A DNA stretch of 63,040 bases, the filler included, from Bigelowiella natans CCMP2755 (Eukaryota; Protista; Cercozoa), in the NCBI GenBank assembly GCA_000320545.1. It is 9 parts of 9 records of this genome, joined end to end, with 100 filler letters (N's around TTAATTAATTAA, not from the genome) between each part and the next. Parts side by side here need not be neighbours in the genome. Positions count along the whole stretch, not along the records: positions 1 to 10,285 come from ADNK01002923.1; 8 more parts are not named here. One strand, given 5' to 3'. Both the position numbers and the translations under genes were made by a program. The notes beneath the pieces are model-generated. The model saw only the letters and a program-made list of their open reading frames with translations. It was not told the DNA's origin and did not search any database. Positions 527 to 10,285 of this stretch are shown in pieces. How positions within the stretch are numbered: position 1 is the first letter of the stretch; each line of letters starts with the position of its first letter.

Positions 527-662
527 CATGTATGAGACGGATGTAATGAACAATTAAAATTTTTCAATGGTCATCCTAATGTAGCTGTGCAATGCAGCGG
601 CTACAGGGCTAATGTTGTGTCTGTTGGTTTCTGCCACCACGTGCTTCATGCATTTGAAAGCG
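527..662 (+). repeat. Dispersed repeat family, copy 1 (core GACGGATG...TTTTCAATGGTCATCCTAATGTAGCTGTGCAATGCAGCGGCTAC)
   Basis: Aligns by eye to the reverse complement of 33290-33425; the spurious translations AFKCMKHVVAETNRHNISPVAAALHSYIRMT and AFTCMKHIIAETNRFKISVVVAALHSYIRMT match. Confidence 0.85.
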
Positions 663-793
663 TCCTCAAGTGTCCGATGTTGTCGCGCGCTGCGCGCAAC
701 AGTTCTTGAATCCTTTTCAGCCTTTGTCAACCGGTTTGTCTCGTCGTTGCGATTCATGATTGCGCTCAATTGATTGCGCAATCTGATTTGTTG

Positions 794-2110
794 TCAACCA
801 TTTGTTGGACATTGCAGGAGATGATCCATGTCCTTCAGGATGCCAGATGCATCGCATGTGGCATCTGTCTCTGTGCATTGTCCACGAGAAAACATGAATT
901 TTCCAAGATTGCCGACACCACAGATGGCGCGCATCCATGATGTAGCGACACTTGGAAGTTTTAGTTTGATGCCGGTGATCGAAGATGACGGAAGGAATCC
1001 AAGATTCTTGAGATGCACAGCTCTCAGTGAATCATTGGACCATTCCTTCTCGAATTCGGCGAAAGCACAGGATTTCATCACTTTGTGATGTTTTTTTAGA
1101 TCTTTTTTCAGCGCCTCTGTTGTCGTCAAAACAGTGGGAAGTTCGTCACCTAACAAGTCGTCGTTGATCGATTTCAGCCGGCGAAACAGAGATGCTTCAT
1201 TGTTCCACGTGGCTTGTGGACACATCAGTCCACGATGTGCCATCTGGCATTTTTCGATTTTCAATGATGAAGCCGCAACTGCTCCAATCATTCATTCCCT
1301 CATGCATTTCAGGACCGCTGCCTGCATCGATCCATGCATTGGTGCGCAACCACGATTTGGCACACTGCACTTTTGTCTGGTGTCGGGGTGGCAACGTGCC
1401 AGTGGGGACGTGGGGAACGTCGTTGGAGACAGATCCAGGCAATCCCAACACTCGTTTCAGGGTTTGGGATTCCATGGAATCCATCTGTTTCATTCGCATG
1501 TTTCTTCGCGATCTCCATGTTGGAGCTGCGCATCTGCTGGATGCAATGAACCATGATTTGTGAAATTTCAGTCTGACATTTGGCGGCACAAGGTGTCTGG
1601 AACAACACAACCTCAATGGAAACCTTCGCTTTTTTTGCAATCTCAGGTGAGAAGCAAGAGCATGTTTTTCGAAGGTCAGTTTGTTGTCGAAGACCAGTCC
1701 GAGACATCTGCCGCTGTCGACCCTTTTCATTTTGCCTTGGAGATTCAGAGAAATGTTCCAAGAAGTTTGGTGCAGGTAGGCTTTGTTTCTTTCATCCATG
1801 ATGAGGCATCCACTTTTGTCACCATTGAATCGCATCCGCCATTTCATGCACCAGGCCGTCATTTGGTTCAGGTCGGCCTGGACATCGTCTTGCATTTTCC
1901 CCCATCGCTTTGGCGAAAATGATTTGTGAGGGGTGACGTCGTCACAGTGCATTTGGAAATCTGCATTGTGAATTTGTTCACAAATGTCGCAATGAGACAT
2001 GAACAGGAAGCAGCTGAGCGATGATCCTTCTGGGACCCCGCTCTCCGTTCTCCCGTTCAGAGGGGTGTTGAGTTCTTTGTTGGCCTTTGGGATGAGGCAA
2101 AAGATGGCCG
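794..2110 (-). mobile_element. Degenerate, 5'-truncated non-LTR (LINE) retrotransposon ORF2 fragment: reverse transcriptase plus C-terminal CCHC-like region
   Basis: ORF 1197..2201 has GVPEGSSLS (GVPQGS motif), MHCDD (YxDD position), QADLNQMTAWCMKWRMRFNGDKS, and CLGLVFDNKLTFEKH (YLG.xxD.KL.F..H). Frameshifted ORF 794..1291 ends in CDASGILKDMDHLLQCP, resembling the LINE C-terminal zinc knuckle. Confidence 0.9.
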
Positions 2111-2320
2111 CCTTGCGTGAGCCATCTCGGGTGTGTGCACACACGCGGGTGTGTGCGTACACGTACTTGTACGTGTACAGCCACATACAATTGTTCAACA
2201 ATGGCTAAAACAAACAAATACAATTTGAGCGCTGTACGTGGTCGCAGCTTTTGCATGCATGCATGTAGCATGCATGGCTTGTTGAGTGTTCATTGCTAGA
2301 TTGCACATTCATCTCGCACG

Positions 2321-3470: not shown

Positions 3471-3859
3471 AGAGAGAGAGAATGAGAGAGAGAGAGAGAA
3501 TGAGAAAGATGAGAATGAAAGAGAGAGGGAAAAGGAGAAAAGAGAGCCCACTTTCTAAGTATCGTCAAATATTGCCATAAAGAGCGCACTCGCTCGCGAT
3601 AGAATTGGAAACTGTAAGGGCTTGGATGCGAGGGACACGGTACCTCTTCGAACCTTGGAGCGCGCAAGAAGCTGTAATTTGTTCTCGCCTTTTCGAACTG
3701 GGTGGAGCAGTTGCTCTGGTGAAGGCCGTCATTCAATGCCCTGAGAAAGTCCTCGCGAACTGCTGTTGAGGGGGGCGAAAAAACATCACTCCTGGACAGG
3801 GAGGCGTTGGCCATGGCAACAATCGCGAGGGCGGCGAAGCAAGTGCCTAGAAAACCCAT
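2683..3859 (-). CDS. Putative secreted protein of unknown function, about 4 exons (approx. 3859-3551, 3395-3314, 3213-3093, 2921-2683)
   Basis: Signal-peptide-like start MGFLGTCFAALAIVAMANA. GT-AG introns join in frame: ...YLTILRK|RPSAEEWAVEAAI...RFLR|LMGDRRNASL...LNRE|YEEAVKLTRILRES... Confidence 0.65.
3401..3545. repeat. (GA)n intronic microsatellite, representative of dozens of (TA)n, (CA)n, (GA)n, (CAT)n and poly-C/G tracts
   Basis: Directly visible; most lie inside introns or next to the spacers. Confidence 0.95.
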
Positions 3860-5838
3860 TTGGTCGTCTTGCCTTCACACATGGAGCACCCTGCCCTCTC
3901 GCCCTCTCAAGGAGACATGCGAGGTGCGAGCACACCGTATTGCTTCGGGTTGTGAACTGAACCTCATTTAAAAAAAAAAAAAACAGTTCTTTTCGTGTTG
4001 TGCGACATGAATTTTCTCTTGTCGCACTGGGCAAAACAAAAGGGGCTCAACAATTCGGTGGATCGGGTTACGAGCTTCTGACAAACGCTCGATTTTTTCT
4101 TGGTGATTCAGTTGGTCGGGGACACGGATGCAAGGATGAATTCATGGATGATCCTTTCAACCGTTCCAATGAAACACTTCTTTCTTTTTTTCTTTCTTTT
4201 GTGGCAAACTTTGCACATGTGTGATGTTGCGTTCTCACGGCGTTGTCGTTGAACTCCTTCTGGTTTCACAGACCTCACCAAAGTCAGTTCGAGGCACTGC
4301 GTTTCGCACACTGCAAATGGTTTGTCATCTCATTGTTCATTGTTCATTGTTGGACGAGGAACGAGGACAGGGACGTGGACAAGGAAGTTGCGGTTGAAAA
4401 TTGTGCTTCGAGTTCGATGCTTCGATCGGAGGAAGTGAAGCGTGATGTGTGATCCGCATCGATGGACACCTGCTAGCCTGGAACACCACTGGTTGCCTGC
4501 TGGCCTGGCTTCACTCACCAGTGTGTCTCTGTTTCCAAGTTTGCACGTGCAGCTGGAAGTGAACTGCTCGTTTCAGCGGCTTTCTTGGAGGCAAAAAAGT
4601 TCAATTGATGAAGGCCGGACGAGCTGTGGAGTGCCAGCGCATCACAGGCAGCCACGCACACCTGGACATGACACGATCGTGTGTGTGATCAGCGCAGCTG
4701 GCTGGAGATGCACATCCACAATTGTGTTGACTTCCATGAGGTTGTCCGACTTGCCTGGCTCCACATCGCTAAATCGCCTGGATGCCTTGTCTGGATCGTG
4801 CAAAGGTGCGCGACACGAACGAAGTTCAAGATGTGCACGCGAGCGATGCGGTCTAGCGGTGCCAATGAGCGCGATTGGCAAGCTCATTTGATTGTGGCTG
4901 ACAGATTGCTAGAGCCAGCGTGGCCGCTGACCGAAATGCGTGAACTGTCATCACGTGTTGTGCGTCGATCCGTGAGGGGCCAGCCGCCGCACGTGACACG
5001 CACTGACATGCATGCTGCTAGCATGCAGCGCTAGTTGGTCAAATTCTGGCGTTCATTGGCACCACTGCTAGACTGGACCACTGGGCACAGAGCACCAGAG
5101 CTAGAGAGCATCACAATCATCTAGGCATGCACAGTGTGCTCTAGCGCTAGCAGACGTGCCAACGTGTCATGCACAATGAATGCTGGCAGAGTGCATCATT
5201 GTGCATTCTGGCATTGCTAGATTGTGCACAGACACATCTCAAGATCTGATGTGATCTAGTGATGTGCACGCAACAATCTCTAGATCTAGCAATTTCCATT
5301 GTTTGCGACGACTGCTCGTGCATGCCATCGCACACCAGTTGCTAGATTGGATTGGAGATCGATTGCATCGCAATCTAGCAATGTGTGATGAACATGGCTG
5401 TGCGATGCGATGCATTTCTCGATCATTGTGACTGTGCACACGCTCTAGCGCTAGCACGATTGCGGCAACGTCCGCTGACACGAACATGTCAGGGTGAGAG
5501 GATGTGTGCACATTGACATGTCTACTAGTCTAGATCGCATGGAACGATGAATCCACAGCAATCTTGAGATGAGTCATAGATCACACATCGCTAAATGCTC
5601 ATGCTCACTCTGTCAAGCACTTGAATGCATGCCCGTCAAGTTGAAATGAAGCACGCACGCAACAACGTGGAAAACACAACATCACAACTGGTTTTTGAGG
5701 CATATGCATTGCTCAAATGTTACCGACTGTACATTGAGTAGCAACTCATTACATATCATGGTTCTCTCATCAGAAATGCTCTGACACTGGAATTAATTGA
5801 CTGTTCTGTACATGGTGAATGCTCCGTGTTGGCTTGGC

Positions 5839-7022
5839 TCATGTGTGTGAAGCCTTTAAGCTCTTCCTTTTGTGTTCAGGAACATAACTGCGCTTACGTT
5901 TCTTGTTCTTTTTCTTTGACGCTCTTTCTGTCGAGGCAGCTTTAGAAGCAGCTTTAGAAGCAGCTGCTTGTTGGGCCTCTTTAAAATCTGGATTATCGAA
6001 ATTGAACTTTGGTGTGCGAATAAGAACACCATTCTGCCACAGTTTGTAAGCCTCGTAATCACGAAACATTGCCGCGTCTAAAAGACCAGCCATTGTGAAG
6101 GGGAAAGTAGGATACGTTGGGTTGGTTCCTTTCTGCTTAATTTGAACCCGAAACTTTTTTCCGTTCTGCACGGATACTCCATGCGGGTACATATTCCATT
6201 TCCATTCTTGTTGCCTGAATTTGTAGCCAGGTCTATTTGTCTTCGTTGGGCCGACATAAAGTAAACCTTGGTGTATCACAGGATCTTTCTTGGCACGGCC
6301 TTTGCGCCTACGGCTTGATGTTCTCACGACTGTGGGGGTATTGTTGCTGCTACTACTGCTGCTGCTGCTGCTGCTACTACTTTGGTCGGATATGTGGCTT
6401 AAAGAATCGTCCCCTTCAGGTTGTTTGACATCTTGCTTAGTCTTCTGCTCATTTCGCTGGAAGCCGAAGCCTCTGAACTCATCAAAGGCCCTTGGATTTT
6501 TCACGTCCATCATCCTGGACTTTTCAAAGTTATTTTTGAACCGTGGATCAGCCTCTCGCTTGTATTTAGAAGACATCTTCAATTTTGTGGTGCATATCTT
6601 CTCTCCTTCAGTCTTGGCCACTGCCCCAGATTTCGCTTGGCCTTTGGCCTCATGTTCGGATTCAAACGATTCTGCATTGAAATTGAGCATACCGATCCTA
6701 TTTCGGTCATCGTTGTACTCATCATAATCTAAGTTCGGAGTCGAACCGAAAGCAGTGGAATCCTATGCAATTAAAAGTTATTTTGAGTGATACCATCGAC
6801 TACGTGAAGTATAATGTCAAACACCTTTTCTTCGAAGAACTGGCCATTCGTGTAGTCAGAATAGAGAGGTTCCTGAGGTTCCTGTACATCACCGAAAACT
6901 CCGAAAGTAGTCGGGGATAGCAGTGGCGAAAAAGCTTCATCTGCATACCATGCAGGGTTATTGCATTGCCCAATGTCAATAGGACTGAGCAGTGACGTCG
7001 ATGATCCTCGTTTCTTCAGCAT
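5839..7022 (-). CDS. AP2/ERF-like DNA-binding domain protein (putative transcription factor), 2 exons
   Basis: YPHGVSVQNGKKFRVQIKQKGTNPTYPTF...DAAMFRDYEAYKLW...KFNF follows the AP2 pattern (GV...KF.A.I...F...AA..YD...LNF). Basic NLS-like tail. In-frame intron FFEEK|DSTAFG. Confidence 0.7.
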
Positions 7023-9821: not shown

Positions 9822-10215
9822 GGCCACTTTGGACGAGCTCACCACTCCCACGTCGATTATGCTTTTGTTTGGGACTTTAGTAGAGACCTTCCAGGCCCTC
9901 CCTCGCCCACCGGTTCATCAGGATGATCGAAGCCAAGAGGAAGCTACTTCGGTAGGCAGTACTTACTCTGAAGAATTCAACTAGCCTTCGATGTTTACTG
10001 CGGGGTTTTATTTTTTTGGGGGGGGGGCGGGGTTCGGTCGGGTGGGAGAGAGGACGTCAGAGCGTGCGTATCTTGAGCAATACAGATCAAGAGCAGCGGT
10101 GTGTGCCGGCGCTGCGATGTTAATACTACCCTTCGCTACCCCTCTTCTCTGCTCAAGGAACTATACACAAAATATCGACGGGATCGAGCTTATTGCAGGA
10201 GTCACGGCGAGCAAA
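8063..10215 (+). CDS. Sirtuin (Sir2/SIRT1-like class I NAD-dependent deacylase), 3'-partial; start uncertain
   Basis: Spliced exons read LHQVIGHIRRAK|RIMVLSGAGISVACGVPDFRSK|GGIYDLIGDMDLELPQP|ECLFDLEYFQDDPKP|FYQLAKKLLP...|RPSLAHRFIRMIEAKRKLLR|NYTQNIDGIELIAGV, containing the GAGIS, PDFRS and TQNID motifs. Confidence 0.93.
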
Positions 10216-10285
10216 GTCAAACCTCTATTTTTTGGAAGTCTGATTTTATAATTTGTTTCATAATCTTCTTACTCCCCCCCCCCCC

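What the first reader, a model, noticed from the sequence alone, without database searches (positions are those of the whole stretch)
612..2157. LINE remnant with TpA erased: candidate repeat-directed A:T->G:C hypermutation ('reverse RIP')
Seen: by eye only five TpA remain in about 1,545 bp (at ~943, 962, 1097, 1151, 1777), whereas roughly 1 in 16 dinucleotides is expected and neighbouring genes and introns contain TpA freely. CpG is not depleted. Positions that are normally Tyr in LINE RTs are His or Cys here: YxDD->HCDD (CAC), KYLG->RCLG, FYKS->FHKS, RYAAP->RCAAP, RYQ->RHQ, i.e. TAY->CAY or TGY. Established: fungal RIP and 5mC decay run the other way (C->T, creating TpA or TpG and destroying CpA or CpG). 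Inference: a process converts TpA to CpA/TpG to near saturation in transposon DNA. Candidate chemistries are adenine deamination at TpA (TadA-like) or a modified thymine that mispairs with G (JBP/TET-type oxidation). I know of no described genome-defence system with this signature.
Basis: partly seen in the sequence, partly recalled or inferred. Interest (0 to 1): 0.92.

Follow-up and report, generated by a model that had tools for sequence, protein, structure and literature searches.

The report
TpA-erasing hypermutation of a LINE copy
A dead retrotransposon copy has had almost every TpA changed to CpA or TpG by a targeted mutation process acting on the chromosome. A 2026 preprint reports the same process for integrated viruses in what is very probably this alga, so the case extends a known phenomenon.

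Summary
Window 612-2157 holds 5 TpA where about 98 are expected, with CpA and TpG in excess and CpG normal. It lies inside a 5'-truncated, internally deleted non-LTR retrotransposon (window 533-2132, minus strand).

The genome holds about 12-17 near-identical intact copies with a 1164-aa endonuclease-RT frame and normal Tyr codons. It also holds at least 13 copies in which 78-97% of ancestral TpA sites became CpA or TpG. In the youngest such copies, 35 of 40 and 39 of 45 substitutions are of this type.

At 37 of 40 sites both outcomes occur among copies. TpA was therefore ancestral and each copy was hit independently. Two copies that share one insertion site differ at TpA sites, including in flanking DNA, so the process acts on resident DNA.

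Preprint 10.64898/2026.01.13.699255 reports de novo TpA>CpA/TpG hypermutation of integrated viruses in Bigelowiella natans, and this genome is very probably that species. "Repeat-directed" is not supported. New here are family-level proof for a transposon, all-or-none tracts bounded by the element, a 3' starting zone and a TACG bias. The enzyme is unknown.

The parts
533..2132 (-). 5'-truncated, internally deleted copy of a non-LTR retrotransposon. The 3' end (...CATCCGTCTCA, no poly(A)) is at window 533. Window 530-2043 matches positions 244-1753 of the intact reference stretch (L031:6201-10000). After a deletion of about 370 bp, window 2046-2132 matches positions 2125-2211.
   Evidence: BLAST against intact copy L031; 3' junctions of 30 copies; protein alignment to the 1164-aa ORF
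612..2157 (.). TpA-erased tract: 5 TA against about 98 expected. 41 of the 46 ancestral TA sites covered are changed. For the 40 sites in the 3' 1.43 kb the outcomes are 21 CA, 12 TG, 5 other and 2 kept.
1197..2201 (-). Open frame remnant covering the RT C-terminal part. It aligns to residues 671-946 of the intact ORF at 84% identity. All 11 Tyr are replaced by His or Cys, including the catalytic YCDD>HCDD, and many Ile (ATA) became Met.
794..1291 (-). Open frame remnant of the C-terminal domain with a CCHC-like knuckle (residues 945-1084 of the intact ORF, 91% identity). It is in a different frame from the upstream remnant, so there is at least one frameshift.
943..1152 (.). Two ancestral TA sites that survived, at 943 and 1151 (reference positions 657 and 865). 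They lie in the 3'-terminal ~620 bp, where TA is spared in most saturated copies. The TA at 962, 1097 and 1777 are not TA in the intact copy.
3676..5018 (.). Second TpA-depleted, CpA/TpG-enriched island (8 TA in 1.34 kb). It has no Pfam or Rfam match and is single-copy at DNA level apart from a ~70-bp motif.
4255..4327 (.). A ~70-bp motif found at 50 or more places in the genome. All 11 fetched loci that carry it are TpA-poor islands.

Best explanation
Window 533-2132 is an old, dead copy of an endonuclease-RT retrotransposon. After integration, a locus-targeted mutator changed its TpA sites to CpA or TpG (A:T>G:C at 5'-TA-3', on either strand) until almost none were left. The process acts on resident chromosomal DNA. 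It is all-or-none per copy. In the one partly mutated full-length copy it is dense in the 3' half and stops part-way to the 5' end. In most copies it stops at the element's ends. It creates no TAA or TAG stop codons. It kills the element by missense change: every Tyr codon becomes His or Cys, including the catalytic YxDD, and ATA Ile becomes Met. It is the same process that a 2026 preprint measured de novo on integrated giant-virus and virophage DNA of Bigelowiella natans. Shown here: the direction, the spectrum, the independence of events, the in situ action and the tract limits. Inferred: adenine deamination by a TadA/ADAT-type enzyme is the likeliest chemistry, and targeting is by a heritable silent state or by RNA or DNA homology rather than by repetition alone.
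For: Spectrum: against intact copy L010, copy L020 has 40 substitutions of which 35 are TA>CA (22) or TA>TG (13). L019 has 39 of 45.

Polarity: at 37 of 40 TA sites both CA and TG occur among 12 mutated copies, which requires TA as the ancestor and independent events. The TA-bearing copies are 99.5% identical to each other and carry an intact 1164-aa APE+RT frame.

Rate contrast: L033 has 60 of 68 TA sites changed but only 7 of 1767 other sites, a ratio of at least 500-fold.

All-or-none: 15 copies have 0-8% of TA sites changed and 13 copies have 78-97%. The single intermediate, L035, is split in space: its 3' half is saturated and its 5' 1.45 kb is untouched.

In situ action: L028 and L030 share the same insertion, with a right flank 100% identical over 1290 bp. 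They still differ at TA sites, including TG-versus-CA doublets, and in 450 bp of flanking non-LINE DNA.

Both strands: CA and TG outcomes are interleaved in every copy with no strand coordination (runs test p=0.28).

Element-bounded: the flanks of most mutated copies have normal TA content.

Generality: a second, unrelated repeat family shows adjacent double mismatches that are mostly CA<->TG. TA o/e of non-LINE windows is bimodal.

Literature: de novo TpA>CpA/TpG at about 6e-7 per site per generation in two viral insertions of B. natans.

Organism: 91.4 Mb genome, a single NCLDV capsid gene, and 14 DNA runs from 2025 in 13 separate studies, matching the preprint's design.
Against: The enzyme and the chemistry are untested. 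A>G and T>C cannot be told apart at a palindromic dinucleotide. The organism's identity is inferred because names are coded. No de novo change at a LINE copy could be shown, because the public runs are collapsed contigs. The five TA sites in the 3'-terminal 620 bp are mostly spared, and neither context nor position fully explains this. Some mutated copies could still have been edited during retrotransposition.
Confidence: 0.85

Rival explanations
1. Editing before integration: an ADAR/ADAT-like enzyme edits the LINE RNA, its first-strand cDNA or both at UA/TA, and the edited copy is then inserted. APOBEC does the equivalent to retroviral cDNA.
For: Mutated tracts coincide with element boundaries in most copies. 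The one partial tract is densest toward the 3' end, where cDNA synthesis begins. One ADAT1-like A_deamin locus and several TadA-like loci exist.
Against: Every copy mixes both strand outcomes without coordination. L028 and L030 share one insertion yet differ at TA sites and in flanking DNA. All copies with at least 2% background divergence are saturated, and no old TA-rich copy was seen. The preprint shows change in resident DNA.
Confidence: 0.1
2. Fungal-type RIP or methyl-cytosine decay in the usual direction: the TpA-poor state is original, and the TpA-bearing copies are the mutated ones (CpA/TpG > TpA).
For: RIP in Neurospora does convert CpA to TpA, so the same pair of dinucleotides is involved (established knowledge).
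Against: 37 of 40 sites show both CA and TG among TpA-poor copies, which is impossible from a CA or TG ancestor in one step. The TpA-bearing copies are the intact, near-identical, young ones. TpA-poor copies have lost all Tyr, including the catalytic one.
Confidence: 0.01
3. No targeting: TpA is simply the most mutable dinucleotide genome-wide, or selection and codon usage remove it, and old sequence loses it gradually.
For: Genome background TA o/e is below 1 (about 0.7). The intact lineage itself carries about 33 sites where older copies still show TA or the opposite outcome.
Against: Flanks next to saturated copies keep normal TA content. Copies with only 0.2-0.4% background divergence are already 88% or locally saturated. 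The distribution is bimodal, not graded. The mutated copies are non-functional, so selection for codon usage cannot act on them.
Confidence: 0.03
4. The same targeted process, but the chemistry is thymine modification (5hmU or base J-like) mispairing with G, not adenine deamination.
For: TpA is palindromic, so T>C and A>G cannot be distinguished.
Against: No Tet_JBP match in the genome, though the control genomes were silent too, so this is weak. The strand whose A is followed by CG is favoured (TACG 84 of 112 contests). From memory, that matches the UACG anticodon loop that TadA reads.
Confidence: 0.15

Closest known systems
TpA hypermutation of integrated NCLDV and virophage DNA in Bigelowiella natans (Mettrop et al., bioRxiv 10.64898/2026.01.13.699255)
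   Same: Same signature: almost only A>G/T>C, only at TpA, giving TpG and CpA. It is local, not constitutive, and more than 500-1000 times the background rate. The same kind of genome-wide TpA-depleted, CpA+TpG-enriched clusters are seen. Very probably the same organism.
   Different: The preprint measured two viral insertions and called transposons only potential targets, based on Pfam enrichment among TpA-poor genes. Here a LINE family is followed copy by copy. That shows saturation, independent events, proof of in situ action from a shared insertion, element-bounded tracts, a 3' zone where sporadic changes cluster, and scars in the active lineage.
Repeat-induced point mutation (RIP) of Neurospora and other fungi
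   Same: A host process that riddles mobile DNA with transitions at one dinucleotide, on both strands, in resident DNA, to the point of inactivation.
   Different: Opposite direction: RIP makes TpA from CpA, and this process destroys TpA. RIP creates stop codons, whereas this one creates no TAA/TAG and removes those that exist. RIP hits all duplicated copies in a sexual cycle. Here many identical copies are untouched, and single-copy DNA can be hit.
APOBEC3 editing of retroviral and retrotransposon cDNA, and ADAR hyperediting of repeat RNA
   Same: Deaminase-type hypermutation used against mobile or viral nucleic acid. ADAR and TadA/ADAT both favour a 5' U before the edited A (as cited in the preprint).
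   Different: Those act on single-stranded cDNA or on RNA before integration and leave strand-pure G>A or A>G tracks. Here both strands are hit in the same copy, and hits continue after integration.
TadA/ADAT2-ADAT3 tRNA adenosine-34 deaminases
   Same: They edit A after U33. From memory, the bacterial substrate loop reads UACG, and the favoured outcome here is on the strand reading TACG. Five TadA-superfamily loci exist in the genome.
   Different: No evidence ties any of these genes to the mutation. There is no expansion and no transposon-linked deaminase. All score below the TadA equivalog cut-off.

Membership tests
B. natans-type TpA hypermutation (preprint 10.64898/2026.01.13.699255) | Changes are almost only A>G / T>C | tested here: met
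   35 of 40 and 39 of 45 substitutions in the two youngest saturated copies
B. natans-type TpA hypermutation (preprint 10.64898/2026.01.13.699255) | Changes fall on TpA and give TpG or CpA | tested here: met
   TA fates per copy, for example 22 CA, 13 TG and 5 kept
B. natans-type TpA hypermutation (preprint 10.64898/2026.01.13.699255) | Confined to particular regions, orders of magnitude above the background rate | tested here: met
   60 of 68 TA sites against 7 of 1767 other sites in L033; normal TA content in flanks
B. natans-type TpA hypermutation (preprint 10.64898/2026.01.13.699255) | Same organism | tested here: inconclusive
   91.4 Mb genome, one NCLDV capsid gene, 14 DNA runs of 2025 in 13 separate studies, marine metatranscriptomes. 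Names are coded.
B. natans-type TpA hypermutation (preprint 10.64898/2026.01.13.699255) | Arises de novo in culture lines | tested here: inconclusive
   The runs are collapsed contigs, so only the intact-copy state was recovered over L035
Fungal RIP | C>T transitions, CpA>TpA | tested here: not met
   The direction is TA>CA/TG
Fungal RIP | All duplicated copies are hit | tested here: not met
   15 near-identical fetched copies have 0-8% of sites changed. More than 100 copies of another element keep a 1659-aa frame.
ADAR/APOBEC-type pre-integration editing | Strand-pure spectrum within a copy | tested here: not met
   Both outcomes are interleaved; runs test p=0.28
ADAR/APOBEC-type pre-integration editing | Copies from one insertion event are identical at edited sites | tested here: not met
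   L028 and L030 differ, including in the flank
Non-LTR (LINE) retrotransposon | APE endonuclease plus reverse transcriptase in one frame | tested here: met
   PF14529 and PF00078 in the 1164-aa ORF of L031
Non-LTR (LINE) retrotransposon | Common 3' end with variable 5' truncation | tested here: met
   All copies end at reference position 245-247. The 5' ends range from position 1278 to full length.
Non-LTR (LINE) retrotransposon | Target-site duplication and assignment to a named clade | not tested
   No PDB match. Relatives are unnamed.

The most novel reading that the evidence does not exclude
The mutator is a guided DNA adenine deaminase system of TadA/ADAT ancestry. It switches individual transposon copies into a state of runaway TpA editing, starting about 0.7-1 kb from the LINE's 3' end and spreading within the element only. 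The active LINE lineage survives by gradually losing TpA in the zone that is hit first. That would make this a natural sequence-targeted A-to-G base editor acting as a genome defence.
Probability: 0.3. Interest if true: 0.85.

Novelty: new member of a known kind. Interest (0 to 1): 0.6.

Why it matters
TpA-specific A:T>G:C hypermutation is a newly reported kind of eukaryotic genome defence, roughly a mirror image of fungal RIP. The preprint showed it on two viral insertions and only suspected transposons. This locus and its family give direct evidence that retrotransposons are targets. They also supply constraints that any mechanism must meet:

- It acts on resident DNA and on both strands, without strand coordination.
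- It is all-or-none per copy and, in most copies, bounded by the element.
- Repetition alone does not trigger it.
- It creates no TAA/TAG stop codons, so dead copies keep long open frames that gene finders will call.

If the enzyme is a natural DNA adenine deaminase with TA specificity, it would interest both evolutionary biology and base-editing technology.

Tried and rejected
- **Ongoing mutation.** I laid four 2025 DNA runs on the partly mutated copy L035 to look for new changes. The runs are contigs that collapse the family. They showed only the intact-copy state and depth ratios of about 12-17x, with about 800x summed depth at the 3'-terminal 150 bp. There is no evidence either way.
- **Strand-coordinated clusters.** I tested for the clusters expected from single-strand deamination. 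None were found.
- **Sequence context of spared TA sites.** CTA and TAG contexts are retained more often, but this is confounded with position in the 3' 620 bp.
- **Identity of the second island.** No match in Pfam, none in Rfam, and no full-length paralogue.
- **Deaminase and TET surveys.** PF00383, PF14437 and PF02137 gave 6+1 loci with no expansion. PF12851, PF14441 and PF08210 gave nothing, and their controls were silent or below cut-off, so absence is not shown.
- **Exact-protein look-ups.** The look-up for the LINE remnant found nothing. The neighbouring 283-aa gene is on a JGI contig.
- **PDB sequence search of the ORF.** No match.
- **Consensus.** A real intact copy served as the reference.

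Full report
**1. Observation**

Window 612-2157 contains 5 TA dinucleotides, at 943, 962, 1097, 1151 and 1777. About 98.5 are expected from base composition (o/e 0.05). CA o/e is 1.81, TG is 1.34 and CG is 0.86, so CpG is unremarkable. Outside such islands the local median TA o/e is about 0.69, so the depletion is far beyond chance or background. TA is frequent right up to 611 and again from 2158. A second TA-poor, CA/TG-rich island lies at about 3676-5018.

**2. What the sequence is**

The tract lies inside a non-LTR retrotransposon copy on the minus strand.

- A whole-genome search found more than 60 matching places. The assembly is 91.4 Mb in 3736 contigs, and the window is contig C814.
- An intact copy (locus L031, contig C3064) has a single 1164-aa frame with an APE endonuclease (PF14529) and a reverse transcriptase (PF00078).
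- All copies share one 3' end...CATCCGTCTCA, without poly(A). They are truncated at different points on the 5' side.
- The window copy runs from 533 to 2132. It starts at about residue 510 of the ORF, lacks about 370 bp internally, and has at least one frameshift.
- The closest protein in public data is an unnamed full-length relative at 68% identity. Others are at 23-28%. I could not assign a named clade.

**3. Two classes of copies**

Over the shared 1.43 kb, twelve copies carry 33-40 TA and are 99.5% identical to each other. Twelve others carry 1-7 TA.

Copy L020 then has 40 substitutions, of which 22 are TA>CA and 13 are TA>TG. Copy L019 has 39 such changes out of 45. Older copies show the same TA losses on top of ordinary divergence. 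The window copy has 41 of its 46 covered ancestral TA sites changed, with 8.6% divergence at other sites.

**4. Direction**

At 37 of the 40 TA sites, some mutated copies have CA and others have TG. One step leads from TA to either state, but CA and TG are two steps apart. TA was therefore ancestral, and each copy was mutated independently. The TA-bearing copies are also the intact, young ones.

This excludes the RIP-like direction. Against the intact ORF, all 11 aligned Tyr in the window copy are His or Cys, including YCDD>HCDD, and many ATA Ile are Met.

A consequence worth noting: the process creates no TAA or TAG stop codons and removes those that exist. Dead copies therefore keep very long open frames. 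That explains why gene finders call them as genes.

**5. How it behaves**

(a) *All-or-none per copy.* Fifteen copies have 0-8% of TA sites changed and thirteen have 78-97%. Every copy with at least 2% background divergence is saturated.

(b) *Very fast once started.* L033 has 60 of 68 TA sites changed but only 7 of 1767 other sites. The per-site rate ratio is at least about 500.

(c) *Tracts.* The one intermediate copy, L035 (full length, 0.2% background divergence), is saturated in its 3' half. Changes thin out near reference position 2350, and the 5' 1.45 kb is untouched.

(d) *A 3' zone where sporadic changes cluster.* All 25 sporadic TA changes in otherwise intact copies lie at reference positions 316-1271, mostly 986-1271. 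That zone holds only 23% of the site-copies examined. Some of these changes are shared between copies, so there are about 14 distinct site-and-state combinations.

(e) *A spared end.* The 3'-terminal ~620 bp has only five TA in the intact copy, and these are mostly spared even in saturated copies. Sequence context alone does not explain this.

(f) *Element-bounded.* The flanks of most mutated copies have normal TA content. Some intact copies sit inside older TA-poor DNA without being affected.

(g) *Both strands.* CA and TG outcomes are interleaved with no strand coordination (runs test p=0.28). Overall, 414 changes are A>G on the coding strand and 312 on the other strand.

(h) *Site-specific outcome bias.* Outcomes differ between sites (chi-square p=5e-8). 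The strand reading TACG wins 84 of 112 contests. Copies are not fully independent, so this is suggestive only.

(i) *Scars in the active lineage.* At about 33 sites the intact copy has CA or TG while older copies keep TA or show the opposite outcome. Some of these are in the 3' tail itself. The living lineage has survived sub-lethal hits.

**6. In situ action**

Loci L028 and L030 carry the same insertion. They share the truncation point, the adjacent fragment, and a right flank that is 100% identical over 1290 bp. They nevertheless differ at TA sites inside the element. They also differ in about 450 bp of non-LINE DNA beside its 3' end: about 15 sites are TA in one copy and CA/TG in the other, and several are TG-versus-CA doublets.

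These changes arose after the insertion was duplicated, so they arose in resident DNA. Together with the mixed strand outcomes, this argues against editing of RNA or cDNA before integration as the main route.

**7. Generality and 'repeat-directed'**

The window's second island has no Pfam or Rfam match and is single-copy apart from a ~70-bp motif. That motif recurs at 50 or more places, and all 11 fetched loci carrying it are TA-poor islands. A second repeat family found among those loci shows adjacent double mismatches that are mostly CA<->TG. This is the ancestor-free form of the same signature.

On the other side, about 12-17 near-identical intact LINE copies (depth ratio) are not visibly mutated. 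Neither are more than 100 copies of another retroelement that keep an identical-scoring RT and a 1659-aa frame. Repetition alone is therefore neither sufficient nor, apparently, necessary.

**8. Literature**

A full-text search found bioRxiv 10.64898/2026.01.13.699255 (Mettrop et al., version of April 2026), read. Its main points are:

- In mutation-accumulation lines of Bigelowiella natans, 231 of 302 new nuclear point mutations fell in one integrated giant-virus region (single copy, transcriptionally silent) and one virophage region.
- All but one were A>G/T>C, all on TpA, at about 6e-7 per site per generation. They appeared in only some lines.
- The authors found 124 TpA-depleted, CpA+TpG-enriched clusters.
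- RT, endonuclease-RT and DDE domains were enriched among TpA-poor genes.
- They proposed an ADAT2-like deaminase.
- They called transposons potential targets, without copy-level analysis.

Two further searches found nothing closer.

**9. Is this that organism?**

It rests on:

- a genome of 91.4 Mb, against about 94.5 Mb implied by the preprint;
- exactly one NCLDV major capsid gene;
- 14 DNA runs from 2025 in 13 separate studies that hold the window, as expected for separately deposited culture lines;
- marine metatranscriptomes that hold the neighbouring genes;
- the identical mutation signature.

**10. Candidate enzymes**

Six-frame searches found six CDA-fold loci and one A_deamin (ADAT1-like) locus. 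The six are:

- two paralogous TadA/guanine-deaminase-like frames, on C980 and C3623;
- a TadA-like gene with introns, on C3286;
- an ADAT3-like frame, on C1679;
- a short TadA-like piece, on C3588;
- a dCMP deaminase, on C570.

There is no expansion and no APOBEC-like, OTT_1508 or TET/JBP match. Those last searches lacked positive controls.

Adenine deamination by a TadA/ADAT-type enzyme is the likeliest chemistry. The arguments are the 5' T requirement and the TACG bias, which from memory matches the UACG anticodon loop that TadA reads. This is inference, not a result.

**11. Verdict**

The phenomenon is no longer undescribed, and 'repeat-directed' is not supported.

This analysis adds family-level proof that a retrotransposon is a target, plus behavioural constraints:

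- in situ action on both strands;
- all-or-none change per copy;
- tracts bounded by the element, with sporadic changes clustering in a 3' zone;
- no new TAA/TAG stop codons;
- scars in the surviving lineage.

**Limits**

Only about 200 kb of the genome could be read. No raw reads were available. The enzyme is unknown.

Noticed in passing
window 3676-5018: A second TpA-depleted, CpA/TpG-rich island (8 TA in 1.34 kb). It has no Pfam or Rfam match and is single-copy at DNA level apart from a ~70-bp motif. It is probably an old, unrecognisable target of the same process.
   Followed up: partly
window 4255-4327; loci L037-L047: A ~70-bp motif present at 50 or more places in the genome, often several per locus. 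All 11 fetched loci are TpA-poor islands of 1-3 kb. Five of them share a 350-1040 bp repeat whose copies differ mainly by CA<->TG doublets.
   Followed up: partly
G000, e.g. C1179:22365-22790 and more than 100 other places: A very abundant retroelement with an identical RT score and an intact 1659-aa open frame in more than 100 copies. It is apparently not hypermutated.
   Followed up: no
L035:9107-9247 (3'-terminal ~150 bp of the LINE): Summed contig depth here is about 800 times single-copy depth in four runs, against 12-17 times for the rest of the element. Loose ends show related tails (...TTCATCACATCCGTCTCA). The 3' tail seems to be shared with many short or related elements.
   Followed up: no
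G000:C980:65331-65633 and G000:C3623:3017-3217 (L049, L051): Two paralogous single-frame TadA/guanine-deaminase-like proteins with HAE...PCPMC motifs. The preprint named only one ADAT2-like candidate, so these are additional candidates.
   Followed up: partly
flanks of LINE 3' ends in L001-L035: Insertions sit next to alternating pyrimidine-purine runs (CATG, CACA, TATA, TGTG). This suggests a target preference of the endonuclease for such sequence.
   Followed up: no
window 5839-6690 (-): A 283-aa open frame with no Pfam match. The exact protein is called on a 1.6-kb JGI contig (sample 3300017184). I guess this is a transcript assembly but did not verify it.
   Followed up: partly
L028:936-1421 versus L030:936-1421: Non-LINE flank beside a shared insertion. 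One copy keeps about 15 TA that the other has changed. Left of position 936 the two loci are unrelated, so the limit of the duplication, or an allelic rearrangement, lies there.
   Followed up: partly
window 9991-10251 (+): An open frame containing ...TQNIDG..., which from memory resembles a sirtuin motif. It is cut off by the end of the piece and was not checked.
   Followed up: no
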